This document shows, one piece after another, positions 4,192 through 60,431 of a stretch of DNA of 64,000 bases. Each line of letters opens with the position of its first letter. The stretch's first letter is position 1. The notes beneath the pieces are model-generated. The model was not told where the DNA came from, ran no database searches, and was given only the letters and a program-made list of their open reading frames with translations. Location of the stretch: positions 370,003 to 434,002 of the forward strand of contig NIVC01000845.1 in assembly GCA_002269645.1 (NCBI GenBank), read 5' to 3'. This DNA comes from Macrostomum lignano. Its lineage: Eukaryota. The position numbers were made by a program, and so were the translations under genes.

Positions 4192-4699
4192 CTTTGAGGT
4201 TGGCACTCATGGGCGAAAACGGCAGGAAAAATCTCAGGCTAATTTTTGTGTACGGACGAACAAATTACTCTGTAGTGTCGCCCAGATTCGAACCCATGTG
4301 CCCTAATCGTGGAGACTCTTGGCCTCGATATTCTGAGCACCCTTATGGCTGAGTACCATTGAGAGCTGCCTGCAATGGCGTACGCTCTGTGCTCACTTAG
4401 GCTAGGAGTTAAATTTCTCTTAGGCAGAGAGTTTTGTTCTTCAACAAGGAAACTTTGTTTCCAGACAGGAAATTAAGGGAAAAAATCCTCTCATTCTCAT
4501 TCCGTGGATCGTCCTGAAGGCAGGATATTAAATTTTGTTCTGCTTGCACCTTTGTAGATTCTTATAGACCTTGTAGACTATCTAGAGATTTTCTTGGGAA
4601 TTTCAATAATTTATTAGCTTGCTAACTATTATAGAGCTTTAAACTGGAACTCTAACTTGTCTTTTTCGATTCTCAGCATTTTCTAGATTCTAAAAAGAC

Positions 4700-5272: not shown

Positions 5273-5687
5273 CGTTTGGCAGCACTAAACCCAAATCGCT
5301 GTCAATGGAAATGAAAATAAAACTGTTTAGGCTGAGCTGTTTAGAATGGTCCAAGAAACATCGAAACCAGTAAGCCACAGCCAATCAACAGTCAAACACT
5401 GACCAACTACTACGATTATGCCATGACAGATCGATACTGCTATGGTCTCTCTGCAATATCTGAACCTCCTTCTCCACGCCTTGCACTCACAGCGCCCTCA
5501 ATTCCTCCCTCACTCGGCCAAGAGCCACACTCTTATTAAGCAAGGGCAGGACAGCTCACAGTTTAGTCAGCTGCTCGCGCACAGTAAGACAGTGAAATCT
5601 ATTTTGCAGTAACCAACGTCTCAGCTTATGCAGCAATAGCCAGCTCTGTTGTGTGTAGTACCAGACTGCTTGCTGCTTTCAAACACT

Positions 5688-11600: not shown

Positions 11601-12034
11601 AGGTTTAATTATTTTTTGTTTGCTGTGAAATTTAAGGTTTGAGATGATGAATGGGACGTTCTCAGTTCTAGGATTTTCTAATGCCCAAATTCTTTGTCGT
11701 TTTATATTTTTTTAATTTTGGAACTTCGTTTTTGTGATAATCACAGACGAGATTCATGGATATGGATAGCAATCAAATACATCACAAACCATTAGCAGCA
11801 AATACTCGTAATATCGCAATTCGGCCAACTTACAGACAAATGCTAAAGTCTGGTAGCAGCCGGCCATGGCAGGAGACTCTGCGAGAATTCACTAAGGAGG
11901 ACGGCCTGCAGACGTCGGCCTTGCTGGAGTACTTTCGGCCGCTGCACGCCTGGCTTGCGGACTATAATAAGCGGCATGGGGTGCCCGTGGGCTGGAAAGT
12001 GCCTAAAGACGTTCTGAAGGGCGTGTCCAGCTGA
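5688..12034 (+). CDS. ACE: Angiotensin-converting enzyme-like peptidyl dipeptidase (peptidase M2), single domain, secreted, about 641 aa
   Basis: Exons 5688-5811, 6896-7032 (alternative same-phase acceptor at 6860), 8469-8623, 9004-9947, 10364-10730, 11836-12034. All introns are GT-AG and phase-consistent, total 1926 nt. Signal peptide [13 protein letters not shown]. Zinc motif HHEMGH with third ligand EAVGD. ACE motifs [42 protein letters not shown]. No TM helix before the stop. Confidence 0.93.
5853..6826. repeat. 15-bp tandem array (CCCTGTCACTCCAAG)n in ACE intron 1
   Basis: About 65 near-identical units. The last unit is GCCCTGTCACTCTACT. Confidence 0.95.
7058..8355. repeat. 15-bp tandem array in ACE intron 2, three blocks: (AGTGGAGTGACAGGT)n, (AGTAGAGTGACATGG)n, (AGTAGAGTGACAGGC)n
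   Basis: Directly visible. The reverse complement is related to the intron 1 array. Confidence 0.95.
8659..8942. repeat. 23-bp tandem array (CTGTCTGTGTCCACCTGTCTAAT)n in ACE intron 3
   Basis: Directly visible. Confidence 0.9.
9995..10345. repeat. 17-bp tandem array (CATTCACACTAGACCCG)n in ACE intron 4
   Basis: Directly visible, degenerate at the 5' end. Confidence 0.85.
10743..11505. repeat. CT-rich 13-bp array (CTCATCTCCCTCT)n in ACE intron 5
   Basis: Directly visible. Confidence 0.9.
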
Positions 12035-13318: not shown

Positions 13319-22682
<9,364 letters not shown>

Positions 22683-22819
22683 AGCGATGAAGCTGAATGA
22701 CAAACTTTTTACTCGTCTATGGAGTTTCTTTCGATCCGATGGCCGGAGCTTTGCTGGTGCAGAGAGTTTTATTCAGACTGCTCTCTCCGAGGCGGGTTGA
22801 AGGAGCCACCGCTACTGAC

Positions 22820-26898: not shown

Positions 26899-27716
26899 GG
26901 AGCATGAAGAGCTGGCACGCACAACAGAATGAGGTGATAGGTTAACACGCGAGATTGCTGTTTCAGCTTTCACTCTCGCAGAAGCAAGCAAGCCGCCAAG
27001 AATGCGCCACAAGGCGCTGACGGCAGCTCCTGCTTTTAATTTTTACAGTGTTTAAGTGAGGGGGGCTGCCGCACTCCATGGAGAATTTAATGGCCAAACG
27101 CTGGGGTGAGCGTGAAAGACAATAAAATATTTGACGCCATTTGACACCCTTCTTCCCTCAATTAAGCGGCAAATTCCTTGTGGCTCCGATACTCTTCTCT
27201 TTGGCGGCTTTTTCAGAAAATTGAATGCCAACCTTTAGCAGCGAGTATATTTCTGTTGCTTTTATAGAAGAAGAGCCGGGTAAGAATGGCGGTTGACACC
27301 GAAAACACACTTATGGCGTTATATTGCCGAATTTAGTCACCGAAATGCCCCGAAGTCTAGGGATCTGTTCCCAACTTTATCGCCCGCTTCTTCCCCACTT
27401 ACTCAGATTTTTTGTCACTGATTTTTTTATAGTTGATCGCCCGCTTCTGCGGCAGATCGGCAGGATTTTGAATGTGCCGTCTGTCCGCGGGTTTGAAATA
27501 TTCTTGACAGCAAAGAGACTAACTCCCTCTGCTCCCTCGACGAATGAATTGCGTGACGTCTTGCTGCCTGAAATGATGTTGCTGACGGCAACTTAATTAT
27601 CATAACACCAACCTTAGGTGACAACTCAACACCTGAATAATGTCCTTGGCAGATGAAATGGCGTTCATTGAGTTTGAAAATAACACTTCCTGACGCACTT
27701 AATGCCATCGTGCAGT

Positions 27717-28135
27717 AAATGGCGCCTCTAACACATCTAATGGCGCCTCCAGCACATCTAATGGCGCCTCTAACACATCTAATGGCGCCTCCAACACATC
27801 TAATGGCGCCTCCAACACATCTAATGGCAATTATAACACATCTAATGGCAATTATAACCCATCTAATGGCACTTATAACACATCTAATGGCACTTATAAC
27901 ACATCTAATGGCGCCTCTAACACATCTAATGGCACTTATAACACATCTAATGGCAATTATAACACATCTAATGGCAATTATAACACATCTAATGGCAATT
28001 ATAACACATCTAATGGCAATTATAACACATCTAATGGCACTTATAACACATCTAATGGCACTTATAACACATCTAATGGCACTTATAACACATCTAATGG
28101 CACTTATAACACATCTAATGGCACTTATAACACAT
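27717..28135. repeat. 21-bp tandem array (ACACATCTAATGGCA/GC..TATA)n
   Basis: Directly visible. Confidence 0.93.
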
Positions 28136-28711
28136 GAAATGACTGAATGCACCCTATGCGCACACCTTGGCATGTGTTCCAGTTTCGAATTGAATATCAA
28201 AAGCATCGAAGCCAGCCAGCATCGACCGACAGTTGGGCTGTGAAATTCTGCAAATTTATTGATGACTTCGGATTGCCAAACAATGGGAGTTTTATTGGGA
28301 ATCTGTCAAAGCGCCATTGTTCCAATGCTTTGGCCCTTGCCGGTGTCCCAGAGGGCCAATAAGCAGCGAGGCGTGCTTGATAAAAATTGGTCAAACTTCG
28401 TTCCACAGTTCACCTGTCCATCCGTGTTGAATGTTTGGGCGCAGTTGGCTTGGGATGCACAAACAATGGGGGGGGGATCACAGTCAATCCTAACCGTATC
28501 CTTCCTGCATCTCTGATTATGCCCGTCAGTCATGCCAGTGGAGCTCAACTGCAAGAATGGCAATATTTGATTGAAGCGGGCGGCCTGCCGGTGCCAATAA
28601 TTAAAATATAAATTTCAAATCGGAACTCGCTTTTGTGTTTAAAAAAATAATACAAATTATTTTACCTAAACATTGACTCCATTGGGTAGGAAACCATTTG
28701 AAACATTTCAT

Positions 28712-29719: not shown

Positions 29720-30870
29720 GGAGTGAGACATGGGAGAGAGTGAGACACCAGTTGAGAGAGTGAGACACCAGTCGAGAGAGTGAGACACTAATTGAGAGAG
29801 TGAGACACCAGTCGAGAGAGTGAGACACCAGTCGAGAGAGTGAGACACTAGTCGAGAGAGTGAGACACTAGTTGAGAGAGTAAGACACCAGTTGAGAGAG
29901 TGAGACACTAATTGAGAGAGTGAGACACCAGTTGAGAGAGTGAGACACTAATTGAGAGAGTGAGACATCAGTCGAGAGAGTGAGACACCAGTCGAGAGAG
30001 TGAGACACCAGTCGAGAGAGTGAGACACCAGTCGAGAGAGTGAGACACCAGTCGAGAGAGTGAGACACCAGTCGAGAGAGTGAGACACCAGTCGAGAGAG
30101 TAAGACACCAGTTGAGAGAGTGAGACACTAATTGAGAGAGTGAGACACCAGTTGAGAGAGTGAGACACTAATTGAGAGAGTGAGACATCAGTCGAGAGAG
30201 TGAGACACCAGTCGAGAGAGTGAGACACCAGTCGAGAGAGTGAGACACCAGTCGAGAGAGTGAGACACCAGTTGAGAGAGTGAGACACTAATTGAGAGAG
30301 TGAGACACCAGTCGAGAGAGTGAGACACCAGTCGAGAGAGTGAGACACCAGTCGAGAGAGTGAGACACCAGTCGAGAGAGTGAGACACCAGTCGAGAGAG
30401 TGAGACACCAGTCGAGAGAGTGAGACACCAGTCGAGAGAGTGAGACACCAGTCGAGAGAGTGAGACACTAATTGAGAGAGTGAGACACCAGTTGAGAGAG
30501 TGAGACACTAATTGAGAGAGTGAGACACCAGTCGAGAGAGTGAGACACCAGTCGAGAGAGTGAAACACCAGTCGAGAGAGTGAGACACCAGTCGAGAGAG
30601 TGAGACACCAGTCGAGAGAGTGAGACACCAGTCGAGAGAGTGAGACACCAGTCGAGAGAGTGAGACACCAGTTGGGAGAGTGAGACACCAGTTGAGAGAG
30701 TGAGACACCAGTCGAGAGAGTGAGACACCAGTCGAGAGAGTGAGACACCAGTCGAGAGAGTGAGACACCAGTTGAGAGAGTGAGACACTAGTTGAGAGAG
30801 TGAGACACTAGTTGGGAGAGTGAGACACCAGTTGAGAGAGTGAGACACCAGTTGAGAGAGTGAGACACCA
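29720..30870. repeat. 20-bp tandem array (GAGAGAGTGAGACACCAGTC)n
   Basis: Directly visible. Confidence 0.95.
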
Positions 30871-31439
30871 AGGCCCAATCTGAGCAGCCGGACTCAATGC
30901 CGGCACTAAGAGGCCAAGTTACACAGGCAGAATTGTCACGGTTGCCACGATTCGGTCCCTGACGCGGCGGTGGCAAGATGGAAATAAAGATTGAGCCTGC
31001 AGAAGGCGGCATGGGGCGGCTGGTGTCATTGTGAGCCCTAACACCCGGGCCCAAATAGGCAGCAAATAGTTAAGCGATAAGCCTGATTTGAATGAGGCTG
31101 GGACCAGGGCCTCATCATAATCGATTCGCTAAAGAGAGCGGAGGGTTGCGGATAAATTGAAGCGAATTCTTGGCCGAGATAAGGGCGCCAATAAGATCAA
31201 TTGCAGCGCCGATGGCTTCTCGTCTGGGTGGGGATAACAAGGCAATATTTCCCAGCCTCGATTAGCACAAACGATAACAAACTGCCTGCTCAGGGGTCCA
31301 CGGCCGGTCTCTCCATCAATGCCTTTCTCTCTTATCTCTCCATTTATTTGTCGCGAGCCGAAATCCTTTGTGAATGTCGATTTTTTATGTCGCTTGGCGC
31401 TTGGCGCACCAGTCTCGGTAGCTGCCGTCTGGGCTCCCC

Positions 31440-32145
<706 letters not shown>

Positions 32146-33237
32146 TCCCTCTGCTTATCGAACTTGAACTCGAACATGCTCGAAAGAGTTGTTGTTATCT
32201 AAAATTGTAACAGCAACTTGACTCTTTATAAAATTGCATTGAAACAAATGAAAATTAGCGACCCCAACGCTTGCGAACCCATAGGGGAATCACTGGGATG
32301 AGCTGGGAGCGATCGGAAACAAGCGCCACTCAATTGGCATGCCAGAGCGTTGAGTTTTAATCAGGCGAACCCCGCGTCCATTCGATTAATGGGCTGCTGC
32401 TGCTCGCTCAGATGAAATCGAGGGGGGCGATTCTCCCACGTGAATATGGGGCGGAGGGTAGGGGAGGGAGGGACCCCGGATGATGATGATGAGGCTGCGC
32501 GGATGCTGGGAGGAGGAGCTGGGGCGCCACCCCGCCCCTGATGGATGGCGCTTTGGTGTCCTCATCGACTCCGCATCTCTCGCTGCTCCTTCGCCGCACC
32601 GAATCCCCAAAGGATTTATGATTGCTTTTTCTCCCTCCCGACCGCCTCTTTCGGGCAAACATCTCCCGCTTCTACAAATTGGAAGCGGCCAGCAGACAAA
32701 TTTCCCGGCTGCTGCGAAAATAGCTCAAGGAAATCGAGCGCAATATTCAGCCAAGAATATTGGCGGGAATAAAGAGCGATGCGGACTGAGGATTTTCAGC
32801 GGAGTTGCCAAATGCCGGGGGTGAAGCGGCCGGTTGGCTAATTTGCCCCCCCCTCTAGTAGAAGCTCGTTCATCAAATTTTATGACCTGTTCAATCAAAT
32901 GAAAGCAAATGAAATGAAATTAAATTCTTTGGTGCGCGGAAGAGATTGTCCGTGAATTTATGACCCCGCGAGGAGCTGAGAAGCCCTGACTTTGAGGGCC
33001 GCGGGAGCTCAGCGAATCAATCAGACAGTTGCCCTCCGAATTCGCGGGGAACCTCAGGCTCGGGAGTCAAGGGCCCCTGACTCTGGCTCATCTTTTACAC
33101 TTATGCAGCTTAAGGGAGGCGCACTGGAGTCTCTTTATTCGCAGACTTGAGGTGCAAATTAATGTAGAATGGCATCTGAACTGCTTTCTCAGAAATGTAG
33201 AGTCTAGTTATCCTACTCATAGTAATCCATGTATCCG

Positions 33238-33889
<652 letters not shown>

Positions 33890-34277
33890 TAAGAAATAAG
33901 GCTAAAATGATATGACGCAATAACCAGCGGCATCGCTAACTATGAGAACTCATGCAAATGTATTGTACATTAGTTATTGCAGGGGTGCAGGTCATAAAGT
34001 CCAGCGAAAATCAGTGTAAAAAGTACATAAGGCTTTAAGCTAAACTAACGAAGTACGAATTCCCGATCGTAAACAATGATTGCTGCATTCGGTATGGCTC
34101 AAGCGCTTTAATGAATAAATAATGGGCACAGCAAACCAGCAAACACACTGTTTCTGAAAGAGAAATACACGTATTGCGACTAATAAAATGACTAAGAAAA
34201 GCTAAAGCTGCGTCTGCATGCAAGCAGGTGTGGAAACAGTGCCGTACGCGTGGTGCTTATGGTTCTTCAAATCCTGC

Positions 34278-47629: not shown

Positions 47630-50360
47630 CATCTACTCTCACAGAGTGATCTACTCTCCCAAAGTGTGATCTACTCTCACAGTGTGATCTACTCTCACAG
47701 TGTGATCTACTCTCACAGTGTGATCTACTCTCATAGTGTGATCTACTCTCATAGTGTGATCTACTCTCACAGTGTGATCTACTCTCACAGTGTGATCTAC
47801 TCTCATAGTGTTATCTACTCTCACAGTGTGATCTACTCTCATAGTGTGATCTACTCTAATAGTGTGATCTACTCTCACAGTGTGATCTACTCTCATAGTG
47901 TAATCTACTCTCATAGTGTGATCTACTCTCACAGTGTGATCTACTCTCACAGTGTGATCTACTCTCATAGTGTTATCTACTCTCACAGTGTGATCTACTC
48001 TCATAGTGTAATCTACTCTCATAGTGTGATCTACTCTCATAGTGTGATCTACTCTCACAGTGTGATCTACTCTCATAGTGTGATCTACTCTCACAGTGTG
48101 ATCTACTCACACAGTGTGATCTACTCTCATAGTGTGATCTACTCTCATAGTGTGATCTACTCTCATAGTGTGATCTACTCACACAGTGTGATCTACTCTC
48201 ACAGTGTGATCTACTCTCAGTGTGATCTACTCTCACAGTGTGATCTACTCTCATAGTGTGATCTACTCTCACAGTGTGATCTACTCACACAGTGTGATCT
48301 ACTCTCATAGTGTGATCTACTCTCATAGTGTGATCTACTCTCATAGTGTGATCTACTCACACAGTGTGATCTACTCTCACAGTGTGATCTACTCTCAGTG
48401 TGATCTACTCTCTCACAGTGTGATCTACTCTCTCACAGTGTGATCTACTCTCTCACAGTGTGATCTACTCTCTCACAGTGTGATCTACTCTCTCACAGTG
48501 TGATCTACTCACACAGTGTGATCTACTCCCACAGTGTGATCTACTCTCACAGTGTGATCTACTCTCACAGTGTGATCTACTCTCTCACAGTGTGATCTAC
48601 TCTCACAGTGTGATCTACTCTCACAGTGTGATCTACTCTCACAGTGTGATCTACTCTCACAGTGTGATCTACTCTCACAGTGTGATCTACTCTCACAGTG
48701 TGATCTACTCTCAGTGTGATCTACTCTCAGTGTGATCTACTCTCACAGTGTAATCTACTCTCATAGTGTGATCTACTCTCACAGTGTGATCTACTCTCAC
48801 AGTGTGATCTACTCTCATAGTGTGATCTACTCTCACAGTGTGATCTACTCACACAGTGTGATCTACTCTCATAGTGTGATCTACTCTCATAGTGTGATCT
48901 ACTCTCATAGTGTGATCTACTCACACAGTGTGATCTACTCTCACAGTGTGATCTACTCTCAGTGTGATCTACTCTCATAGTGTGATCTACTCACACAGTG
49001 TGATCTACTCTCACAGTGTGATCTACTCTCAGTGTGATCTACTCTCTCACAGTGTGATCTACTCTCTCACAGTGTGATCTACTCTCTCACAGTGTGATCT
49101 ACTCTCTCACAGTGTGATCTACTCTCTCACAGTGTGATCTACTCACACAGTGTGATCTACTCTCTCACAGTGTGATCTACTCTCACAGTGTGATCTACTC
49201 TCACAGTGTGATCTACTCTCTCACAGTGTGATCTACTCTCACAGTGTGATCTACTCTCATAGTGTGATCTACTCTCACAGTGTGATCTACTCTCACAGTG
49301 TGATCTACTCTCACAGTGTGATCTACTCTCACAGTGTGATCTACTCTCACAGTGTGATCTACTCTCACAGTGTGATCTACTCTCAGTGTGATCTACTCTC
49401 ACAGTGTGATCTACTCTCACAGTGTGATCTACTCTCACAGTGTGATCTACTCTCACAGTGTGATCTACTCTCACAGTGTGATCTACTCTCTCACAGTGTG
49501 ATCTACTCTCACAGTGTGATCTACTCTCAGTGTGATCTACTCTCTCACAGTGTGATCTACTCTCTCACAGTGTGATCTACTCTCTCACAGTGTGATCTAC
49601 TCTCTCACAGTGTGATCTACTCTCTCACAGTGTGATCTACTCACACAGTGTGATCTACTCCCACAGTGTGATCTACTCTCACAGTGTGATCTACTCTCAC
49701 AGTGTGATCTACTCTCTCACAGTGTGATCTACTCTCACAGTGTGATCTACTCTCATAGTGTGATCTACTCTCACAGTGTGATCTACTCTCACAGTGTGAT
49801 CTACTCTCACAGTGTGATCTACTCTCACAGTGTGATCTACTCTCTCACAGTGTGATCTACTCTCACAGTGTGATCTACTCTCAGTGTGATCTACTCTCAG
49901 TGTGATCTACTTCCACAGTGTGATCTACTCTCACAGTGTGATCTACTTCCACAGTGTGATCTACTCTCATAGTGTGATCTACTCTCTCACAGTGTGATCT
50001 ACTCCCACAGTGTGATCTACTCTCACAGTGTGATCTACTCTCATAGTGTGATCTACTCTCACAGTGTGATCTACTTCCACAGTGTGATCTACTCTCACAG
50101 TGTGATCTACTTCCACAGTGTGATCTACTCTCATAGTGTGATCTACTCTCTCACAGTGTGATCTACTCCCACAGTGTGATCTACTCTCACAGTGTGATCT
50201 ACTCTCATAGTGTGATCTACTCTCACAGTGTGATCTACTTCCACAGTGTGATCTACTCTCACAGTGTGATCTACTTCCACAGTGTGATCTACTCTCATAG
50301 TGTGATCTACTCTCTCACAGTGTGATCTACTCCCACAGTGTGATCTACTCTCAGTGTGAT
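47630..50360. repeat. 18/20-bp satellite (CACAGTGTGATCTACTCT[CT])n, 2.7 kb
   Basis: Directly visible. Confidence 0.96.
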
Positions 50361-50974
50361 CTTTTGTAAGTTTTTAGTGGCCGCAAACTAAAATGATTAA
50401 TAATTGCTAACACTCAGCCTTCGCTGATCATCATTTTCATTAAGACAAGCACATTGCCAATTAGATGCTTAATAATGAAATGGCTCCATATTAATTAACT
50501 TAATTCCTATTTTTAATGGTCCCTAAATTACATTAGATTAAATATGAACCTTATACTTGTAGTACTACTTTCACAAAGCCGTCTACTCTCAAGATCAGGG
50601 TTCTCAGTTGGTCTGGAAATATTTGCTCCGAATTTTTTGCATGAAGAGCATGAAAATTTAACTCAGAAATAACGCTCACTTTGAAATTCAGGTTCTGCTA
50701 TTTGTTCCATCTCGGTAATTTATCTAACAGCGAACCCTGAGGCATTCAGAGAAACTGCAAGATTGCCAATTGTAGCGTCCTAAATACCTGAGTTGTCAAC
50801 GAGTCTGCAGATGCAGTCACACCTGGTTGTTGATTTTATTTGGCTACATGTGTTTGGCTACATGTGTAAGTCGCGCTTATTGTTACAAGCGGAGAGCGTC
50901 GGCTTTGAACTGTGCTATAAGTTTCAGTAGAAATTGCATTCACCTAGCCGGGGCACCATTGCCACCAATTTGAA

Positions 50975-53900
50975 ATGGGAATGCCACGGCACTGCATCAA
51001 GCTTATCGCCATCATATTGCTGGGTCAGTTGGTAAGCGATTCTTAATGTTTCCCAAATGTTTACCTGCAGTGTTGTCATGCCCAATGAATCAAATCAATT
51101 ATTTCAGCTGATTCAAGCTGTGACTTCAGTTGCCGTTATCAAAATTCGATTCCTGTACTACAGCAACCAGAGAGGTTGGCTTTATAACGGGCACAGATGC
51201 GATAACCGGTTCTTCTTCGGCAGACACTGCGATCCGTTTTTTACCATTAAGCTCACAGTTAGTGGGTAAGTTCCTAGCCAGCCAAATATGGCGATTTTGA
51301 GACACTCTGCGTCCAGTGTGTCTCAGATGTCTGTCTAGTCTGCGTCCAGTGTGTCTCAGGTGTGCCTAGTCTGCGTCCAGTGTGTCTCAGGTGTGTGTCT
51401 AGTCTGCGTCCAGTGTGTCTCAGGTGTGTGTCTAGTCTGCGTCCGGTGTGTCTCAGGTGCCTGTCTAGTCTGCGTCCAGTGTGTCTCAGGTGTGTGTCTA
51501 GTCTGCGTCCAGTGTGTCTCAGGTGTGTGTCTAGTCTGCGTCCAGTGTGTCTCAGATGTGTCTAGTCTGCGTCCAGTGTGTCTCAGATGTCTGTCTAGTC
51601 TGCGTCCAGTGTGTCTCAGGTGTGCCTAGTCTGCGTCCGGTGTGTCTCAGGTGTGCCTAGTCTGCGTCCAGTGTGTCTCAGGTGTGTCTAGTCTGCGTCC
51701 GGTGTGTCTCAGGTGCCTGTCTAGTCTGCGTCCAGTGTGTCTCAGGTGTGTGTCTAGTCTGCGTCCAGTGTGTCTCAGATGTGTCTAGTCTGCGTCCAGT
51801 GTGTCTCAGATGTGTCTAGTCTGCGTCCAGTGTGTCTCAGATGTGTCTAGTCTGCGTCCGGTGTGTCTCAGATGTGTCTAGTCTGCGTCCAGTGTGTCTC
51901 AGTGTGCCTGTCTAGTCTGCATCCAGTGTGTCTCAGGTGTGTCTAGTCTGCGTCCAGTGTGTCTCAGATGTGTCTAGTCTGCGTCCGGTGTGTCTCAGAT
52001 GTGTCTAGTCTGCGTCCAGTGTGTCTCAGTGTGCCTGTCTAGTCTGCATCCAGTGTGTCTCAGGTGTGTCTAGTCTGCGTCCAGTGTGTCTCAGATGTGT
52101 CTAGTCTGCGTCCAGTGTGTCTCAGATGTGTCTAGTCTGCGTCCAGTGTGTCTCAGATGTGTCTAGTCTGCGTCCAGTGTGTCTCAGATGTGTCTAGTCT
52201 GCGTCCAGTGTGTCTCAGGTGTCTGTCTAGTCTGCGTCCAGTGTGTCTCAGATGTCTGTCTAGTCTGCGTCCGGTGTGTCTCAGGTGTGTCCGTTCTGCG
52301 TCCAGTGTGTCTCAGGTGTGTCTAGTCTGCGTCCAGTGTGTCCCAGATGTGTCTAGTCTGCGTCCAGTGTGTCTCGGGTGTGTCTATTCTCCGTCCAGTG
52401 TGTCTCAGGTGTGTTTACTCTGCGTCCAGTGTGTCTCGGGTGTGTCTATTCTCCGTCCTGTGTGTCTCGGGTGTGTCTATTCTCCGTCCTGTGTGTCTCG
52501 GATGTGTCTATTCTGCGTCCAGTAGATGTAGATAAATCAGCGTCGAGTGTCTATCAGATGTGTCTATTATCTAAACGACGTATCTTGACGCAGGGAAACG
52601 TTTCGCTACGAGACGGACAGGGAGAAAGGCGCAAACACCGTATATTTCGGCAGCAAGATTGTGAACATTGACAATCCGATAGTGAATCGAATCGAAAACT
52701 ATCAAGTAAGTGTTGGCGCTGATGGGTAAGCATCGCCCCTCGCATTGGTCCCCGTTTTTAGAACTATGATATTAAATTTTATTGTAGGGCCACTTAGACA
52801 TCAGCGTGAGAGTTGATGACTTTGACTCTGTGACATCCAATGACTACATGGGGTCTTTCCACCACCGCTTCTCTGCTACCGCCAAACCGTTTGGAGACCT
52901 CAGCGCGCCAACGGAAGTTCATCTGGTGGACAACGGCATGGCGGCTGCCAAGTGAGTCATGTTGACGTGGCAACTGTTTTGCTACAAAGTGCATGCTCTG
53001 GTTGGTATTAGGATCATGATTTAACGAGAAGCATGCAACGATTTCAGTCTAGCATTGCAGATATCAGTCCAGTGTGAAGTGCACTACTACGGATCGGATT
53101 GCAGCAAATTCTGCCAACCCAGAAGCGACTACAATGGCGGTCACTACTATTGTGACATGGACGGCAACAAGATCTGCAAGCCAAGTACTTTAACTAGACA
53201 AACTATTTTTCATGAGTAAAGTTGTGTCCGTAAAACATGAGCAATCATTTAATTTCCAGCATATAACCTGGCTACCGGCTGTCGAGAAAAGTTTTGCTCC
53301 AGTGAGCCGTGTAAAAATGGTGGCAGGTGTATTGATCTGCCAGATAAATTTGTCTGCAAATGTAGGCCGAGTTTTGGAGGTGAGAGAGTCCTGCAGTGAC
53401 ATCGATGCTTAGTCCAGATTCAGTTCAGTTTAACTGCTCATAAATCACGTATCACACAGGAGCCACGTGCATAAGGGAACTCCAACCCTGCCAGTACAGC
53501 AGACCCTGCCAAAATGGTGGTACCTGCATCGCCCGTGTCGGCTGCGCCTGCCCCGCTGGTTTCCATGGCGACGCCTGTCAGCTCGACGTCGACGAGTGCC
53601 GATCGATCTCGCCGTGTCGGGGAAAGGGCAGCGTCTGCGAGAACTGGTTCGGCACCTACAGCTGCCACTGCGGACCGGGCTGGCGCGGCCGGAACTGTAC
53701 AGAGGACATCGACGAGTGCAGAATAATGGGCTATCCGACCTGCTTCAACGGCGGCAACTGCGAGAACACGCCAGGCAGCTTTACCTGCCGCTGCCCGTCC
53801 GGGTTTTCCGGCCGGCAGTGCCAAGAGGACGTCGACGAGTGCCGCCTGGACAGCGGGCCTTGCTCAAACGAGACAGAGGTGTGCCAGAACCTGTTGGGCG

Positions 53901-54358
53901 GCTTTGTCTGCATGTGCCGCGATGGCTTTCAGGCTCCAAACTGCACGCAGAAGTGGCCAGAGCTGCTGGAGTCCCTCAGTGCCAGCATTCCACTGTGGCC
54001 GCCAGTTCTAGTGGCCGCGCTCGCCGTTTCTGCCTTGACAGCGATTCTGGCGGTGTTCCGATGCTCGCGCAGGCGACTCCGAGCTGCTTTTTCAGGGCCG
54101 TCCAAGGACAGCAAGGAATATTCAACAACGGACAACCCGGTGTACAGTCCGGATGAGCGTGGCGATGCTCCAGATGAATTGTATTCCTACAACGAGCCGC
54201 AGGAGGCTGCCGACGTCAGGAGGCCTGTGGAGAATACTGGACAGGAGCTGCCGCCGCCTCTACCGCCGAGGCCGCTGAATTTCGCGGCGATTCGAACTCG
54301 GCAACAGATGGGATGTGAGGCGGAGGCGGGGTGGGGCAGGCAATGTCCCCGCACGTGA
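50975..54358 (+). CDS. Delta-like Notch-ligand-family protein, paralog 1 (SP-C2-DSL-5xEGF-TM-tail), about 548 aa
   Basis: Exons 50975-51031, 51108-51265, 52594-52705, 52788-52951, 53048-53184, 53260-53379, 53460-54358, phase-consistent, 1647 nt. C2 loop VRVDDFDSVTSNDYMG. DSL CEVHYYGSDCSKFCQPRSDYNGGHYYCDMDGNKIC. Five EGF repeats. TM LWPPVLVAALAVSALTAILAVF. AATAAA at 54623. Confidence 0.88.
51300..52520. repeat. 26-30-bp array (GTGTCTAGTCTGCGTCCAGTGTGTCTCAG)n in Delta-like 1 intron 2
   Basis: Directly visible. Confidence 0.93.
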
Positions 54359-54689
54359 GCCTCTACAACTATCAACATTAAGTCTTAGCTTTGAACACTT
54401 GCTTCGAAGGTCAAGGACACTCATCCCGGATCCTGACAATTCATATTTATAAATCAAGAGATTTATAAGCTCTTGGTGTTTTTTTTGTAGAAAAATTACT
54501 ATTGACTTTCCTGTCATAATCACTTTATATAAATTTTCCTAAAACAGGGATATACTTCAATGATAAATTATTTCCCCAGTCGTGTATTTGCAAGTTTTTT
54601 TTCTAAATTCTCATAAATCTACAATAAATGCTGCATCGAAAACAGCATATTTGTTTTTATTTTTACTTTAAAATGAGACTGAGAGTACC

Positions 54690-56250
54690 ATGTGAGAGGT
54701 GATCACACCTTGAGAGAGTTTATTACACCGTGGGAGAGTAGATTACACCATGAGAGAGTAGATCACACGGCGAGACAGTGGATCGCACTGTGAGATTGTG
54801 GATCGCACTGTGAGATTGTGGATTGCACTGTGAGATATTAGATTGCACTGTGAGATAGTAGATCACACTGTAAGATAGTGAATCACACGGCGAGACAGTG
54901 GATCACACTGTGAGATATTAGATCACACTGTGAGATATTAGATCACACTGTGAGATAGTAGATCACACTGTGAGATTTTAGATCACAATGTGAGATAGTA
55001 GATCACACTGTGAGATAGTAGATCACACTGTGAGATAGTAGATCACACTGTGAGATAGTAGATCACACTGTGAGATATTAAATCACACAGTGAGATAGTG
55101 GATCGCACTGTGAGATAGTAGATCACACGGTGAGATATCAGAGCACACTGTGAGATATTACATCACACTGTGATATAGTAGATCACACTGTGAGATAGTA
55201 GATCACACAGTGAGATAGTGGATCGCACTGTGAGATAGTAGATCACACGGTGAGATATCAGAGCACACTGTGAGATATTACATCACACTGTGATATAGTA
55301 GATCACACTGTGAGATAGTAGATCACACTGTGAGATAGTGGATCACACTGTGAGACAGTGGATCACACTGTGAGATAGTAGATCACACGGTGAGATATCA
55401 GAGCACACTGTGAGATATTACATCACACTGTGATATAGTAGATCACACTGTGAGATAGTAGATCACACTGTGAGATAGTGGATCGCACTGTGAGATAGTA
55501 GATCACACGGTGAGATATCAGAGCACACTGTGAGATATAACATCACACTGTGATATATTAGATCACACTGTGAGATAGTGGATCACACTGTGAGACAGTG
55601 GATCACACTGTGAGATAGTAGATCACACTGTGATATATTAGATCACACTGTGAGATAGTGGATCACACTGTGAGATAGTGGATCACACTGTGAGACAGTG
55701 GATCACACTGTGAGATAGTAGATCACACGGTGAGATATCAGAGCACACTGTGAGATATTACATCACACTGTGATATAGTAGATCACACTGTGAGATAGTA
55801 GATCACACTGTGAGATAGTGGATCGCACTGTGAGATAGTAGATCACACGGTGAGATATCAGAGCACACTATGAGATATAACATCACACTGTGATATATTA
55901 GATCACACTGTGAGATAGTGGATCACACTGTGAGACAGTGGATCACACTGTGAGATAGTAGATCACACTGTGATATATTAGATCACACTGTGAGATAGTG
56001 GATCACACTGTGAGATAGTGGATCACACTGTGAGATATTACATCACACTGTGATATATTAGATCACACTGTGAGATATCAGAGCACACTGTGAGATATTA
56101 CATCACACTGTGATATATTAGATCACACTGTGAGATAGTGGATCACACTGTGAGATAGTGGATCACACTGTGAGACAGTGGATCACACTGTGAGACAGTG
56201 GATCACACTGTGAGACAGTGGATCACACTGTGAGACATTGGATCACAGCA
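54690..56250. repeat. 20-bp satellite (GATCACACTGTGAGATAGTA)n, inverted relative of 47630-50360
   Basis: Reverse complement CACAGTGTGATCTACTATCT differs by one base from the 20-bp unit of the upstream array. Confidence 0.95.
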
Positions 56251-56749
56251 TGTTATCAGGAGTCATTACTAAATATCATCCATTAGAAACCGTCACGCAG
56301 CTGGTCCAGTGCGTCAAGAAAAGTGGCTCGTAAAATTTAGCATTCATTTTAGAATCTTCGCAATTCAATGCATAAAAAAGTAATTAAAAGCAATCGGTAA
56401 TGTTGACAATAAAATAGTTAATTGATTTCCTTCCAAACAGCTCACAAGATTCGTGAGAATCGGAAGCTTATCTCATGGCATTCCTTTACAGTAACGCTTG
56501 TTCAGAGTCGAAAGGCTCTGTAAAGATGCAGGGTGCGGGGGTTCAGTGTGGAGTAATTATTAATGTAGCCAGCCAATTTGGCAGCGCAAACTTTAATTAG
56601 GTGCGAACAGTCACGTGTTATTGCTACCAGATCTCCTGGCGAAGGCGAAGGCGAAGCAGAGTAATATATATGAGTACCTGAAAAGTGTGGACAAATCAAG
56701 TCTGCAGTGTCAAATTTATCCTGACTGATCCAACTATCAGCTTTCAGCA

Positions 56750-59700
56750 ATGCATTGGTGCTGCAAGCTTGCACTGGCAACTTTTATGAGCTTGCTGGTG
56801 AGTGGATTGGTGCTGCCTGAGATGCCCAATGTCTCCCATCAGGCTATTAATGTCTTACCGAATTCTGTGTTCCAGATATTGAACTCAGCCAACTCTGCCG
56901 CCGTGGTCAAGGTTCGATTCCTGAGTTACATCAACCGTCGTGGTCTGGCGTACAATGGGCACAAATGCGATCCATCAATTTTTGTATTCCACAGACCTTG
57001 CGATCCATTTTTTAAAATAAAAATTTCAGTGGAAGGGTAAGTAGTGACAGTGGGAGTAGTGACAGTTGGAGTAGTTACAGTTGGAGTAGTGACAGTGGGA
57101 GTAGTGACAGTTGGAGTAGTTACAGTTGGAGTAGTGACAGTTGGAGTAGTGACAGTTGGAGTAGTGACAGTTGGAGTAGTGACAGTTGGAGTAGTGACAT
57201 TTGGAGTAGTTACATTTGGAGTAGTTACAGTTGGAGTAGTTACAGTTGGAGTAGTTTCAGTTGATTTGGAGTAGTTTCAGCTGCAGTAGCTACAGTCGTG
57301 CTACAGTATTTGCAATGCAGGTGTTCAGACAGTATCGGATGCCACAGCAAATATTAATTCTGAGCTGTCAGACTTGCATCATCAAGCCTACGTATGTTCA
57401 CTCGTGTTTGGAATAGTTAAATCGGAAATAGGAAAGCAATCCCTGCCTCTATTGCACAGGTATGAGTGCCGCACCCAAACGGATCGAGTGAGAAACAAGA
57501 ACTCGCTAGATTTTGGCAGCCGAATAGTGAACATCAGAAACCCGATCGTGTGCAGAGTCACCAACTATGCGGTAAAATGCACATCGCTAATGTACTCAGA
57601 TATTCGCAAGCTGTCAAGCAGATTTCAGATTTGCTTTCAATTTACTTGCTCGCAACTTTTCAGCGCTGGGTAAAAGTCACGGTTCGAGTCTACGACTACG
57701 ACTCCGTGTTTGATCACGACCTGATGGGTACTTTCAGTCATAAATATTCTGCGGATGCGCGCCCGTTCGATGACAACTCGCCTGAGTCGGCACAGATTCG
57801 ACTCACTGACGAAGGCAAATCGAAGGCTGAGTGAGTTGAATGCAATGTTAAATTTAACCACCGAAATACAAACGCAACACGCACACGAAAGGGGCGACGC
57901 CGCAGTGAATAAATGCATGTGAAAGCTGTTTTGCTTCATTATGAAAAGCTGCCTCAATGTTCGTTAATGTAGGGGTTAACCCAGACAGCCCGGTACTTGA
58001 CATGTACTCTGCCTTCTTGCATGCCTTACAGGCTTATGCTAAACGTACACGCCTGCGGAGGGTTTAAATCTAATTTGATTCAATGATCTGACTCCAACTA
58101 AAGTATGAATCAAATTGTTTCTGCAACTTTGCATTTTAACATCACCTTTATCTTCACACGCCGTGTCTTCCAGACTGTGGCTGAAAATCTCTGTTCGGTG
58201 CAAGGTCAACTACTACGGTTCCGAGTGCAAGAAGTTCTGCCAGCCGACGAGATCTCCTGAGCTCGGTTACTACGGCTGCACCAGTGACGGAAACAAAGCT
58301 TGCGAGTCCAGTATGGCGAAAATCAGTTTTATCACTTTCTCCGTGTGATTTCAAGTTGAGAAAATGATAAGTAAACAAGAAATACGAGTAGTTTATTAAT
58401 TTCCTTTTCCTATGCAGCCTACGATCCCAACAGAGATTGCCGAAGGACTTTCTGCGCCAGCAGTCCATGCCAGAACGGTGGAACGTGCGAAGATTTACCT
58501 GGAAGTTTTGTTTGCGCCTGCCCTCTTCAGTTCGGAGGTAGGTGGGAAAAATTCCGTTGAGCATGGATTGACATAGGAATCGGATCGAACAAATTTATAA
58601 TGTGGTAATCAAACTCCTTGTAGGTAATGATTGCACTGTACCTATAGCGCTCTGCCAGCACAGCAGACCCTGCCAAAATGGTGGTACCTGCATCGCCGGT
58701 GTCGGCTGCGCCTGCCCCGCTGGTTTCCATGGCGACGCCTGCCAGTTCGACGTCGACGAGTGCCGATCGATCTCGCCGTGTCGGGGAAAGGGCAGCGTCT
58801 GCGAGAACTGGTTCGGCACCTACAGCTGCCACTGCGGGCCAGGCTGGCGCGGCCAGAACTGTACAGAGGACATCGACGAGTGCTCGCAGTCAAGCTTAGC
58901 TGCCTGCTTCAATGGCGGAAAATGTGAGAACACGCCAGGCAGCTTTACCTGCCACTGTCCATTGGGTTATAGGGGCGAAAAATGCGAAGAGGACATAAAT
59001 GAGTGCGCGGTTCAAACCATTGATGACGGTCAGTTGAGTTCGCCGTGCAACGGAAATGGCAGCATCTGTGAAGACTTGATCGGAGACTACAAGTGCGTCT
59101 GCGGTCCGGGCTGGCGAGGTCAAAACTGCACCGAGGACATCGACGAATGCGCATTGGAAAGTGGATTTGACTCATCACTATGTCTAAACGGTGGCACATG
59201 CCGTAATATCCTTGGTGGATTCGTCTGCCTCTGCCCGACTGGGTTTAGCGGTGAGCAATGCCAAGACGATGTAGACGAGTGCGCTAACCAAGCTGCCGAT
59301 GGCGACAACCACAACCTACTTTGCCATGGCAACGGCAGTTTTTGCAAGAATTTGCCAGGAAACTACAGCTGCATCTGTGGTCCAGGTTGGACAGGACGGC
59401 ACTGCACAGAGGACATCAACGAGTGCGAATTGAACGATTCCAGTGCAATTTGTCTTAACGACGGCGTTTGTGTAAATCTACCGGGGAGCTTTAAATGCCA
59501 ATGCAAACTCGGATTTCGTGGGGATCACTGTCAAGTAGATGTCGACGAGTGCACTAATCAATTTGATCACCAGAGCCTATTGTGCAATGGCAACGGAAGC
59601 TATTGTAAGAACTTACCAGGTAACTATAGCTGCATCTGCGGTCCAGGCTGGACAGGAAGGCACTGCGCAGAGGACATCGACGAGTGCAAATTGAACAATT

Positions 59701-60431
59701 ACACAACGATGTGTCTTAATGGCGGTGTTTGCGCAAATCTGCCAGGGAGCTTTGAATGTCATTGTAAAACAGGCTTTCGAGGGGATCGTTGCCAGGAGGA
59801 TATTGAGGAGTGCCTGGAAGGAGACGGACCTTGCAATAACGAGACCCATGTATGCAAAAACCTGATTGGTAGCTTTAGTTGTCTTTGCCGCGATGGCCAG
59901 GTGAGTCCCAACTGCACTGCACCGATAGACCCAACATTGCAGCTAAGCAAAGATGACAGCACTTGGTGGACGCCAGTGATCGCCTTTGTGATCGCTTTCG
60001 TGATCACAATTACTATTTTATCTTCAGCGCTACTGATTCTGTTATATTTGAGACCGTCATTTTGCCATTTTTTGCCGTTCTGGCGGTTCCGTCGCTTGTC
60101 TGACACAACCGCAGTCTTTAAGGGTTGCGATTCGACCGAGGCTGAAAACCCAGTGTACGACGTTGGCGATGAAGCGACACTAGATGTCGGCGATGTTTCA
60201 TCCGCAGCTGTCTACGAAGTGCCCGGGCCGGCAAATCGCTCAAATCAGAGCGAGAATCGGAATTCGGTGATTCCGCCTCAGCTGCCGCCACGGCCGCAGG
60301 TTGCGCTGATTGGCGGTTTGCCCTACCAGCAGATGTCGAACTTATCGTCAGCTGCCGACTCTACCTGCAGCTACGAGGAGCCCAACAGCGTTATTCGGAG
60401 CAGCGCTGGTTTTTCTGCTTACCTGGGCTAA
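56750..60431 (+). CDS. Delta-like Notch-ligand-family protein, paralog 2 (SP-C2-DSL-11xEGF-TM-tail), about 850 aa
   Basis: Exons 56750-56797, 56876-57036, 57460-57571, 57664-57830, 58174-58310, 58418-58537, 58624-60431, 2553 nt. Intron positions and phases match paralog 1. C2 loop [35 protein letters not shown]...[13 protein letters not shown]. Eleven EGF repeats, most of the calcium-binding DIDEC type. [33 protein letters not shown] at 60578. Confidence 0.9.
57042..57280. repeat. 15-bp array (GTAGTGACAGTTGGA)n in Delta-like 2 intron 2
   Basis: Directly visible. It starts immediately after the GTAAGT donor. Confidence 0.92.

What the first reader, a model, noticed from the sequence alone, without database searches (positions are those of the whole stretch)
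54060..60431. Notch-ligand-like proteins with NPxY, YxxP and PxxPxR signalling tails and almost no lysines
Both tails keep NPVY (TDNPVY; AENPVY), YxxP sites (YNEP; YEVP and YEEP) and a proline motif (PPPLPPRP; PPQLPPRP) despite divergence elsewhere. They contain only 2 and 1 lysines. Canonical DSL ligands depend on lysine ubiquitylation by Mind bomb/Neuralized for endocytosis. NPxY binds PTB adaptors, pYxxP binds Crk/Nck-type SH2 domains, and PxxPxR binds SH3 domains. These proteins may act as receptors or use ubiquitin-independent endocytosis (inference).
Basis: partly seen in the sequence, partly recalled or inferred. Interest (0 to 1): 0.7.

Follow-up and report, generated by a model that had tools for sequence, protein, structure and literature searches.

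The report
Flatworm Delta-like proteins with NPxY tails
Two neighbouring genes of the flatworm Macrostomum lignano encode Notch-ligand-like membrane proteins whose lysine-poor cytoplasmic tails carry an NPxY-type sorting motif that recurs in related mollusc, annelid and nemertean proteins, suggesting a little-studied ligand class that may be internalised without ubiquitin.

Summary
The window is Macrostomum lignano DNA. It holds two tandem + strand genes for type I membrane proteins with a signal peptide, a C2/MNNL-like domain, a DSL domain, 5 or 11 EGF repeats, a transmembrane helix and a disordered tail.

The tails have 2 lysines in 99 residues and 1 in 128. Both contain NPVY and PPxLPPRP in the same order, plus YxxP sites.

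- NPxY and the proline block exceed chance.
- YxxP alone does not: 43-45% of shuffles contain one.
- Lysine poverty is modest against the proteins' own ectodomains (P = 0.03).

The tail as a whole has no detectable homologue outside M. lignano among 1.84 billion representative proteins. However, the 12 closest DSL proteins with readable tails (gastropods, a bivalve, an annelid, two nemerteans, two unidentified transcripts) all carry NPx[YF] or [FY]xNxxY. In 11 of them the motif lies 23-63 residues after the membrane. Only 1 of 12 canonical Delta/Jagged tails has such a motif. Pooled lysine is 3.3% versus 8.6%.

The best reading is a divergent spiralian DSL subgroup that uses PTB-adaptor docking, and possibly SH2/SH3 docking, instead of lysine-rich Mib/Neuralized targets. 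That function is inferred, not shown. I found no prior description.

The parts
50975..54358 (+). Gene 1, Delta-like, 548 aa. Exons: 50975-51031, 51108-51265, 52594-52705, 52788-52951, 53048-53184, 53260-53379, 53460-54358. Order of parts: signal peptide, C2/MNNL-like domain, DSL, 5 EGF repeats, transmembrane helix, 99-aa tail.
   Evidence: The model has GT-AG introns throughout. It has the same length as NCBI PAA91973.1 (BOX15_Mlig028312g1, 548 aa) and differs from it at 3 residues. Pfam DSL scores 38.3 bits against a 24.2 cut-off.
56750..60431 (+). Gene 2, Delta-like, 850 aa, or 876 aa if the in-frame 78-nt stretch 56798-56875 is retained. Exons: 56750-56797, 56876-57036, 57460-57571, 57664-57830, 58174-58310, 58418-58537, 58624-60431. 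Order of parts: signal peptide, C2/MNNL-like domain, DSL, 11 EGF repeats, transmembrane helix, 128-aa tail.
   Evidence: GT-AG introns with the same phases as gene 1. Pfam DSL scores 26.0 bits against a 24.2 cut-off. The C-terminal 534 aa differ at 3 residues from the corresponding part of UniProt model A0A1I8JHX7.
53987..54058 (+). Gene 1 transmembrane helix (IPLWPPVLVAALAVSALTAILAVF)
   Evidence: Hydropathy scan; coordinates.
54059..54355 (+). Gene 1 cytoplasmic tail: 99 aa, 2 K, 13 R, predicted disordered
   Evidence: AlphaFold pLDDT is 25-40 over residues 447-540 of P0098.
54134..54145 (+). Gene 1 NPVY (NPxY-type PTB-adaptor motif)
54188..54199 (+). Gene 1 YNEP (YxxP), within LYSYNEPQ
   Evidence: It aligns locally with gene 2's SYEEP.
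54251..54274 (+). Gene 1 PPPLPPRP (PxΦPxR class II SH3-type motif; also contains PPLP)
59964..60044 (+). Gene 2 transmembrane helix ([27 protein letters not shown])
   Evidence: Modelled as a helix at residues 921-946 of P0098.
60045..60428 (+). Gene 2 cytoplasmic tail: 128 aa, 1 K, 8 R, predicted disordered
   Evidence: pLDDT is 25-33 over residues 948-1073 of P0098.
60093..60158 (+). Gene 2 juxtamembrane block [11 protein letters not shown]...AENPVY, with NPVY at 60147-60158. It holds the tail's only lysine.
   Evidence: It aligns with 'KRSDTAMMFKNGARNPAYNV' of relative P0130 (BLASTP E = 0.003 for that single comparison).
60213..60224 (+). Gene 2 YEVP (YxxP)
60273..60296 (+). Gene 2 PPQLPPRP (PxΦPxR class II SH3-type motif)
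60372..60383 (+). Gene 2 YEEP (YxxP), within CSYEEPN

Best explanation
The locus holds two tandem paralogous genes of Macrostomum lignano. [quoted passage not shown]

**Shown.** Both are type I membrane proteins with a ligand-type C2-DSL-EGF head. The tail is intrinsically disordered, lacks the lysine enrichment of canonical ligand tails, and has neither the Mib1-type NNL/KNxN motifs of canonical ligands nor a C-terminal PDZ ligand. Instead it carries short linear motifs. The NPxY-type motif is the best-conserved tail feature among the nearest DSL relatives in molluscs, an annelid and nemerteans.

**Inferred.** The NPxY/[FY]xNxxY motif docks a PTB-domain clathrin adaptor of the Numb, Dab or ARH/Ced-6 type. 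The protein would then be internalised or recycled without needing Mib1- or Neuralized-dependent lysine ubiquitylation. That makes it a natural counterpart of the engineered Delta-LDL-receptor chimera. The proline block (PxΦPxR) and the Tyr-x-x-Pro sites would be secondary docking sites for SH3 and, after tyrosine phosphorylation, SH2 proteins. Those sites could link the ligand to the actin or endocytic machinery, or carry a signal back into the ligand-bearing cell.
For: **Identity and architecture**
- The top hit is M. lignano 'Delta-like protein' at 99% identity.
- An independent NCBI model of gene 1 has the same 548-aa length.
- The DSL domain is above Pfam's cut-off in both proteins.
- The DSL region matches solved Jagged-1 (5UK5, E = 1.6e-11), Jagged-2, Serrate, DLL4, DLL1 and Delta.
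- In the AlphaFold model the N-terminal all-beta domain has pLDDT 82-93 and the tails 25-40.
- Foldseek's best matches are DLL1 4XBM (3.8e-26), Jagged-1 4CC0 and DLL4.

**Motifs beyond chance**: shuffle tests.

**Conservation across relatives**
- 14 of 14 tails in the group carry NPx[YF] or [FY]xNxxY. In 13 of them the motif lies 23-63 residues after the membrane; Littorina's only exact match (YINTVY) is distal. Per-tail chance is 0-10%.
- 1 of 12 canonical Delta/Jagged tails has such a motif.
- Pooled tail lysine is 3.3% against 8.6%.
- Relatives' tails have 3.6% K against 3.2% in their ectodomains. Canonical ligands have 8.6% against 4.7%.
- The juxtamembrane-to-NPxY block of gene 2 aligns with a gastropod-type relative.
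- Capitella's tail has ELPPPLPLP and three YD[VI]P sites. Aplysia has two NPxYEP sites plus LPPSPTR and YKVPPSPHR.
- No NNL or KNxN motif and no PDZ C-terminus is present.

**Literature**
- Canonical ligands need ICD lysines and Mib1 or Neuralized.
- DLL3 has a lysine-free ICD, still internalises, and signals poorly.
- A lysine-free Delta carrying the LDL-receptor NPxY signal is active at the wing margin but not in lateral inhibition (PMC3241720).
- Delta with all ICD lysines changed to arginine keeps partial activity (PMC5675594).
- NPxY binds ARH, Dab2 and Numb (PMC6912373).
Against: - No functional data exist for these proteins. Binding to Notch, endocytosis, adaptor binding and tyrosine phosphorylation are all untested.
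- The M. lignano NPVY lacks the aromatic residue at -5 (Thr in gene 1, Ala in gene 2) that Dab/ARH-type PTB domains prefer.
- One or two lysines remain. Neuralized is known to use mainly a single lysine in Drosophila Delta (PMC3241720). Gene 2's lysine sits in an F-K-x-G context shared with P0130 and P0218.
- Orthology with the spiralian group is not resolved. In an NJ tree of the C2+DSL region the two flatworm genes form a long branch outside the spiralian clade.
- No homologue of the tail as a whole was found outside M. lignano among 1.84 billion representatives.
- The DSL domain is atypical. Only profile positions 1-37 of 46 match, TY[DN] replaces GWxG, and several conserved C2 cysteines are lost. 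Notch binding itself may therefore be altered.
- YxxP is expected by chance.
Confidence: 0.5

Rival explanations
1. They are ordinary ubiquitin-dependent Notch ligands. The one or two remaining lysines suffice as Mib1 or Neuralized acceptors. The NPxY-type motif serves another purpose, such as polarised sorting, recycling or turnover.
For: Neuralized relies mainly on a single lysine (K742) in Drosophila Delta (PMC3241720). Gene 2's only lysine lies in 'VFKG', matched by 'MFKNG' in P0130 and 'FAKNG' in P0218. Gene 1's two lysines lie 7-10 residues before the NPVY.
Against: The lysine position is not conserved across the group. Haliotis P0284 has no tail lysine, and Potamilus P0227 has one, in the stop-transfer RRRK. 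No NNL or KNxN docking motif is present. Tail lysine is not enriched over the ectodomain, unlike canonical ligands.
Confidence: 0.2
2. They are DLL3-like non-activating ligands. They would act as cis-inhibitors or decoys that cycle without ubiquitin and do not trans-activate Notch.
For: DLL3 has no ICD lysines, internalises and recycles, but signals poorly (PMC3241720; PMC2064846 listed). As I recall it, DLL3 is also described as having a degenerate DSL and no DOS-type EGF1-2. Genes 1 and 2 have an atypical DSL without GWxG and ordinary EGFs after it.
Against: Nothing here distinguishes cis from trans action. I recall no NPxY motif in DLL3, and it was not compared here. DLL3 is a vertebrate Delta paralogue, not an orthologue. 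The engineered NPxY-bearing Delta can signal in one context (PMC3241720).
Confidence: 0.15
3. They are not Notch ligands in practice. They would be adhesion or receptor molecules whose DSL-EGF ectodomain binds another partner, and whose tail signals through phosphotyrosine and SH3 adaptors (ephrin-B-like reverse signalling, or CED-1/Draper-like).
For: The tail combines a PTB motif, YxxP sites and a PxΦPxR block. Capitella's relative has three Cas-like YD[VI]P sites. The C2 and DSL domains are derived.
Against: The whole head is ligand-like by sequence and by fold. There is no EMI or other receptor-type domain. No YxxL or ITAM-like motif is present, and gene 1 has no YxxΦ at all.
Confidence: 0.12
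4. The motifs are chance matches in proline-, serine- and acid-rich disordered tails, and low lysine reflects overall composition.
For: YxxP occurs in 43-45% of shuffles and PxxPxR in 6-19%. Ectodomain lysine is also low at 3.5-3.9%.
Against: The joint chance of the three motifs is about 0.1% per tail, and PPxLPPRP is below 1e-5. An NPxY-type motif recurs in 14 of 14 related tails from four phyla against 1 of 12 controls. The motifs are unchanged in the allelic or homeologous M. lignano copies, while three nearby tail residues differ.
Confidence: 0.03

Closest known systems
Canonical Delta and Jagged/Serrate ligands (e.g. Drosophila Delta, human DLL1/DLL4/JAG1)
   Same: Type I membrane protein with an N-terminal C2/MNNL domain, a DSL domain and EGF repeats. 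Sequence and fold matches are to exactly these structures.
   Different: - No DOS-type EGF1-2 after the DSL.
- The DSL lacks GWxG.
- Tail lysine is 0.8-2% against 7-12%.
- No NNL or KNxN motif and no PDZ C-terminus such as ATEV.
- No VWC domain.
- The tail has NPxY, PxΦPxR and YxxP motifs instead.
Mammalian DLL3
   Same: A divergent DSL ligand with a lysine-free ICD that internalises without ubiquitin (PMC3241720).
   Different: It is a vertebrate-specific Delta paralogue, and I recall no NPxY-type motif in it (not compared here). Genes 1 and 2 keep 1-2 lysines and belong to a different, spiralian-type lineage.
Engineered Dl-LDL+ chimera (Wang and Struhl 2004, as described in PMC3241720)
   Same: A Delta ectodomain joined to a lysine-free tail whose only signal is an NPxY endocytic motif. 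This is the same design principle as inferred here.
   Different: It is artificial and carries the LDL-receptor FDNPVY context. The natural proteins lack the -5 aromatic residue in M. lignano and add proline-rich and YxxP motifs.
Spiralian 'Delta-like' expansion (PMC8166818) and the planarian delta-1 to delta-6 genes (PMC11801701)
   Same: Lineage-specific multiplication of DSL/EGF genes in lophotrochozoans and flatworms. The closest relatives found here are gastropod, bivalve, annelid and nemertean DSL proteins.
   Different: In the passages retrieved here those papers do not describe the cytoplasmic tails. The shared NPxY/[FY]xNxxY motif and low lysine are not mentioned there.
NPxY-bearing receptors: LDLR family, integrin beta tails, CED-1/Draper/MEGF10
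   Same: An NPxY or NxxY motif in a short disordered tail, read by the PTB adaptors ARH, Dab2, Numb and Ced-6 (PMC6912373, PMC3338440).
   Different: The ectodomains are unrelated. There are no LDL-A, EMI or integrin domains.

Membership tests
DSL (Delta/Serrate/LAG-2) ligand superfamily | DSL domain | tested here: met
   Pfam PF01414 scores 26.0 bits (gene 2) and 38.3 bits (gene 1) against a 24.2 cut-off, but only profile positions 1-37 of 46 match. phmmer hits the DSL of Jagged-1, Jagged-2, Serrate, DLL4, DLL1 and Delta structures at E = 1.6e-11 to 1.8e-5.
DSL (Delta/Serrate/LAG-2) ligand superfamily | N-terminal C2/MNNL domain immediately before the DSL | tested here: met
   Pfam MNNL was not hit. 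The region aligns with the family consensus. For gene 1 it is modelled as an all-beta domain with pLDDT 82-93, and the best structural matches are C2-DSL-EGF ligand heads. Several conserved cysteines are lost. Gene 2 was not modelled.
DSL (Delta/Serrate/LAG-2) ligand superfamily | EGF repeats, a single transmembrane helix, type I topology | tested here: met
   EGF and EGF_CA hits; signal peptide and one hydrophobic helix.
DSL (Delta/Serrate/LAG-2) ligand superfamily | Binds and activates Notch | not testable with these tools
   This needs binding and co-culture reporter assays.
Canonical Delta/Jagged subfamilies | Atypical DOS-type EGF1-2 directly after the DSL, and GWxG at the end of the DSL | tested here: not met
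   In the alignment, Jagged-2 has the extra DOS-type EGFs. Genes 1 and 2 and the spiralian group pass straight into ordinary EGFs, and TY[DN] replaces GWxG. The definition of DOS is from my own knowledge.
Canonical Delta/Jagged subfamilies | Lysine-rich ICD with Mib1/Neuralized docking motifs (NNL, KNxN-like) | tested here: not met
   Lysine is 2.0% and 0.8% against 6.7-11.7% in 11 of 12 control tails. No NNL or KNxN motif is present. Motif definitions are from PMC3241720.
Canonical Delta/Jagged subfamilies | C-terminal PDZ ligand (Delta: ATEV-type); VWC/cysteine-rich region (Jagged) | tested here: not met
   The C-termini are CPRT and AYLG. Scallop Delta P0317 ends in ATEV. There is no VWC hit.
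DLL3-type divergent ligands | Lysine-free ICD; orthology to vertebrate DLL3 | tested here: inconclusive
   The tails keep 1-2 lysines. Orthology is implausible because the nearest relatives are spiralian.
LDLR-type FxNPxY internalisation signal | NPxY with an aromatic residue at -5 relative to Tyr | tested here: inconclusive
   NPVY is present in both tails, but position -5 is Thr (gene 1) or Ala (gene 2). Seven short-form relatives have [FY]xNxxY with the aromatic residue but no Pro.
CED-1/Draper/MEGF10 engulfment receptors | EMI domain, laminin-type EGFs, and a tail with NPxY plus YxxL | tested here: not met
   No EMI hit. No YxxL is present; gene 2 has only YQQM and gene 1 has no YxxΦ.
Spiralian DSL subgroup with NPxY-type tail (defined here, provisional) | C2+DSL head followed by ordinary EGFs; tail without lysine enrichment; NPx[YF] or [FY]xNxxY 23-63 residues after the membrane | tested here: met
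   All features are present in genes 1 and 2. Phylogenetic nesting within the group is unresolved.

The most novel reading that the evidence does not exclude
Spiralian animals have a third, previously uncharacterised class of DSL proteins besides Delta and Jagged. Its tails have exchanged the lysine/Mib1/Neuralized/epsin route for a PTB-adaptor (NPxY-type) route, with added SH3 and phospho-Tyr docking sites. These would be natural ubiquitin-independent Notch ligands, or ligands that also signal backwards into their own cell.
Probability: 0.3. Interest if true: 0.7.

Novelty: new variant of a known kind. Interest (0 to 1): 0.55.

Why it matters
How ligand endocytosis activates Notch, and whether ubiquitin is strictly required, is still debated. 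So far it has been probed with artificial tails: lysine-free Delta and the Delta-LDL-receptor chimera. A natural, cross-phylum group of DSL proteins with lysine-poor, NPxY-bearing tails would give an evolutionary test case.

M. lignano is open to RNAi and transgenesis (from my own knowledge, not checked here). The finding also corrects database records, because three UniProt models fuse these two genes. It adds tail-motif information to the lophotrochozoan 'Delta-like' expansions described in the literature.

Tried and rejected
- **Tail search.** phmmer of gene 2's TM+tail against 1.84 billion representatives found only the M. lignano model itself. Tail conservation could therefore only be judged through relatives found by their ectodomain.
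- **Exact look-ups.** Four model variants were not found. The cluster of P0098 did yield the independent 548-aa NCBI model.
- **First homologue search.** Using only the N-terminal 315 aa returned mostly EGF fragments, because hits appear limited to about 0.57-1.75 times the query length.
- **Masked profile.** Masking the EGF region with X in a profile (A1) still drew many crumbs/SNED1 EGF proteins, but it added eight DSL relatives.
- **Automatic tail alignment.** Aligning trimmed tails to full-length gene 2 scattered them over the EGF region, so it was not used.
- **NJ tree.** A tree of the C2+DSL region did not resolve where the flatworm pair belongs.
- **Pfam MNNL.** The model did not hit, so the fold was tested by structure instead.
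- **Literature.** Searches for a prior description of NPxY in natural DSL ligands found none.
- **Unidentified transcripts.** The source organisms of Logan transcripts P0130 and P0132 could not be named from their run accessions.
- **Gene 1 signal peptide.** An apparent frameshift suggested a pseudogene, but a 76-nt intron (51032-51107) explains it.

Full report
**What the window is.** The sequence is animal genomic DNA rich in minisatellites. A full-length search with my gene 2 model gave a 99%-identical top hit, 'Delta-like protein', Macrostomum lignano, UniProt A0A1I8H8I3 (P0098). The organism is therefore the free-living flatworm M. lignano.

**Gene models.**
- Open frames, self-comparison and tblastn of exon peptides show two tandem + strand genes with the same exon plan and intron phases.
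- All introns are GT-AG.
- Gene 1 (50975-54358) encodes 548 aa.
- Gene 2 (56750-60431) encodes 850 aa, or 876 aa if an in-frame 78-nt stretch is not spliced.
- Gene 1's signal peptide first looked frameshifted. A 76-nt intron (51032-51107), used in database models, resolves this.
- NCBI's independent model PAA91973.1 (BOX15_Mlig028312g1) is also 548 aa and differs from my model at three residues. This supports the exon structure.
- Three UniProt models (A0A1I8H8I3, A0A1I8JHX7, A0A1I8FTZ8) are chimeras that fuse gene 1 to part of gene 2.

**Check of the observation.**
- In composition-preserving shuffles, NPxY occurs in 2-3% of tails and exact NPVY in 0.07-0.26%.
- PxxPxR occurs in 6-19%, the shared 8-mer PPxLPPRP in fewer than 1 in 100,000, and all three motif types together in about 0.1%.
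- YxxP alone occurs in 43-45% and is uninformative.
- Lysine poverty is modest against the proteins' own ectodomains (3.5-3.9% K; pooled P = 0.03). It is clear against a 5.5% or 9% background.
- The two tails are too diverged for BLAST. A global alignment places the same anchors in the same order: RRL, F[SK]G, NPVY, GD, Y, EN, PPxLPPRP.
- By region, the paralogues are 48% identical in the N-terminal domain, 53% in DSL+EGF1, 79% in EGF2-4, 62% in the last EGF, 26% around the membrane and 35% in the tail.

**Are they Notch-ligand-like?** Yes, in the ectodomain.
- Both pass Pfam's DSL cut-off, although only positions 1-37 of 46 match and TY[DN] replaces the usual GWxG.
- Gene 1's DSL region matches the solved structures of Jagged-1, Jagged-2, Serrate, DLL4, DLL1 and Delta.
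- Pfam's MNNL model is not hit.
- An AlphaFold model was built on P0098, whose first 539 residues are gene 1, using a 17-sequence alignment. It gives a confident all-beta N-terminal domain (pLDDT 82-93).
- Foldseek ranks the C2-DSL-EGF heads of DLL1 (3.8e-26), Jagged-1 and DLL4 first.
- The same model gives pLDDT 25-40 for both tails, as expected for disordered regions that work through short motifs.
- Differences from canonical ligands are ordinary EGFs directly after the DSL (no DOS-type EGF1-2), loss of several conserved C2 cysteines, and no VWC domain.

**Is the tail conserved elsewhere?**
- As a whole, it is not. phmmer of gene 2's TM+tail against 1.84 billion representative proteins found only the M. 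lignano model.
- I therefore looked for relatives by ectodomain and read their tails.
- The DSL proteins most similar in the head fall into two sets:
  - 'Long' gastropod forms: Aplysia, Bradybaena, Littorina, Batillaria, Elysia and one unidentified transcript. The Elysia model (P0100) has no transmembrane helix or tail and is left out of the tail counts.
  - 'Short' forms: Gigantopelta, Haliotis, the bivalve Potamilus, the annelid Capitella, the nemerteans Lineus and Tubulanus, and one unidentified transcript.
- All 12 with a readable tail, plus genes 1 and 2, carry NPx[YF] or [FY]xNxxY. In 13 of the 14 the motif lies 23-63 residues after the membrane. The exception is Littorina, whose proximal site is degenerate (YVNALPY) and whose only exact match, YINTVY, lies near the C-terminus.
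- Examples: ENPLYEP and TNPMYEP (Aplysia), LNPLYIP (Bradybaena), RNPAYNV (P0130), RNPAFNA (Batillaria), FENILY, FENIVY, FENVTY, FENQMY, FGNALY, FSNAIY and YNNAIY.
- Per-tail chance of the motif each carries is 0-10%.
- Only 1 of 12 canonical Delta/Jagged control tails has such a motif (P0132, FINPIY).
- Gene 2's block '[23 protein letters not shown]' aligns with 'WWPGSKRSDTAMMFKNGARNPAYNV' of P0130 (E = 0.003 for that single comparison).
- Proline-rich blocks recur but are looser: LPPDPNR (Littorina, P0130), LPPSPTR and YKVPPSPHR (Aplysia), ELPPPLPLPGPP (Capitella).
- Capitella also has three YD[VI]P sites.
- Pooled tail lysine is 3.3% in this group against 8.6% in controls.
- In the relatives the tail (3.6%) equals the ectodomain (3.2%). 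In canonical ligands the tail (8.6%) is nearly twice the ectodomain (4.7%). What distinguishes the group is the missing lysine enrichment.
- No NNL or KNxN motif and no PDZ C-terminus is present. Scallop Delta ends in ATEV.
- Within M. lignano, other allelic or homeologous copies differ at one tail residue in gene 1 and two in gene 2. All of these lie outside the motifs.

**Caveats on relationship.**
- In an NJ tree of the C2+DSL region the two flatworm genes are sisters (100% bootstrap). They sit on a long branch beside, not inside, the spiralian clade, and canonical Delta/Jagged form a separate clade.
- Orthology to the spiralian group therefore rests on best-hit similarity and tail motifs, not on a resolved tree.

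**How it probably works.**
- Canonical DSL ligands must be ubiquitylated on ICD lysines by Mib1 or Neuralized and taken up through epsin to activate Notch (PMC3241720, PMC5675594, PMC6912373).
- Known exceptions frame this case:
  - DLL3 has no ICD lysines, still internalises and recycles, but signals poorly.
  - A lysine-free Delta carrying the LDL-receptor NPxY signal is active at the wing margin but not in lateral inhibition (PMC3241720).
  - Delta with all ICD lysines changed to arginine keeps partial activity (PMC5675594).
- NPxY motifs are read by the PTB-domain clathrin adaptors ARH, Dab2 and Numb (PMC6912373).
- I infer that this group uses the NPxY-type motif for adaptor-mediated, ubiquitin-independent internalisation or recycling.
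- I also infer that the PxΦPxR block and Tyr-x-x-Pro sites are secondary SH3 and SH2 docking sites. None of this is shown.
- The M. lignano motif lacks the -5 aromatic residue.
- One or two lysines remain, and gene 2's lysine is in a partly conserved F-K-x-G context.
- Rival readings stay open: an ordinary ubiquitin route through a single acceptor lysine, a DLL3-like cis-inhibitor, or a non-Notch receptor.

**Comparison with the literature.**
- Expansion of DSL/EGF 'Delta-like' genes in lophotrochozoans has been reported (PMC8166818).
- Seven Delta/Jagged homologues have been reported in planarians (PMC11801701).
- The retrieved passages of those papers do not discuss the tails.
- Full-text searches combining DSL, Notch ligand and NPxY returned no natural example.

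**Verdict.** I class it as a new variant of a known kind (DSL ligands), of moderate interest.

Noticed in passing
window 50975-60431; P0098, P0106, P0328: Three UniProt/WormBase-type M. lignano models (A0A1I8H8I3, A0A1I8FTZ8, A0A1I8JHX7) are chimeras. They join gene 1, tail included, to part of gene 2. The junction falls inside the tract that the two genes share at 88% nucleotide identity.
   Followed up: partly
window 53488-53842 vs 58652-59006: This 355-bp tract (EGF2-4) is 88% identical between the two genes, with 9 synonymous and 21 non-synonymous codon differences. The rest of the proteins is about 50% identical or less. This suggests gene conversion or a mosaic duplication history.
   Followed up: partly
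window 47637-50362 and 54701-56247: Gene 1 is flanked by long arrays of one 18-20 bp minisatellite family (unit GATCACACTGTGAGATAGTA) in opposite orientations. Further arrays lie in introns: 51306-52523 (31 bp x 38) and 57040-57263 (15 bp x 15).
   Followed up: partly
window 9203-9988 and 10390-10734, + strand: Two exons of an angiotensin-converting-enzyme-like gene (Pfam Peptidase_M2, E = 2.4e-81 and 8.8e-47).
   Followed up: partly
genes 1 and 2, N-terminal domain (exons at 51108-51265 and 56876-57036): Both flatworm proteins have lost several cysteines that are conserved in the C2/MNNL domain of all other aligned DSL proteins. For example, CCD becomes RCD or KCD, and the C of 'xICxD' becomes K. 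The effect on folding or on Notch or lipid binding is unknown.
   Followed up: no
L001 (Logan SRR15421486 transcript), protein P0132: This canonical-type DSL ligand has DOS-like EGF1-2 and comes from an unidentified organism. Its tail carries a textbook FxNPxY (FINPIY). NPxY in DSL tails may therefore not be limited to the spiralian subgroup.
   Followed up: partly
window 22344-22703, - strand: ORF beginning [20 protein letters not shown], followed by Gln/Pro-rich sequence. It resembles an eh1/TN-type repressor motif of NK-class homeobox genes, but there is no Pfam hit on this exon.
   Followed up: no
window 2357-8462, 10497-11642, 13489-14457, 16048-17181, 27427-28243, 29968-32202, 33029-33915: Many long 'ORFs' here are read-through of minisatellite arrays in several frames. 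They are not genes.
   Followed up: no
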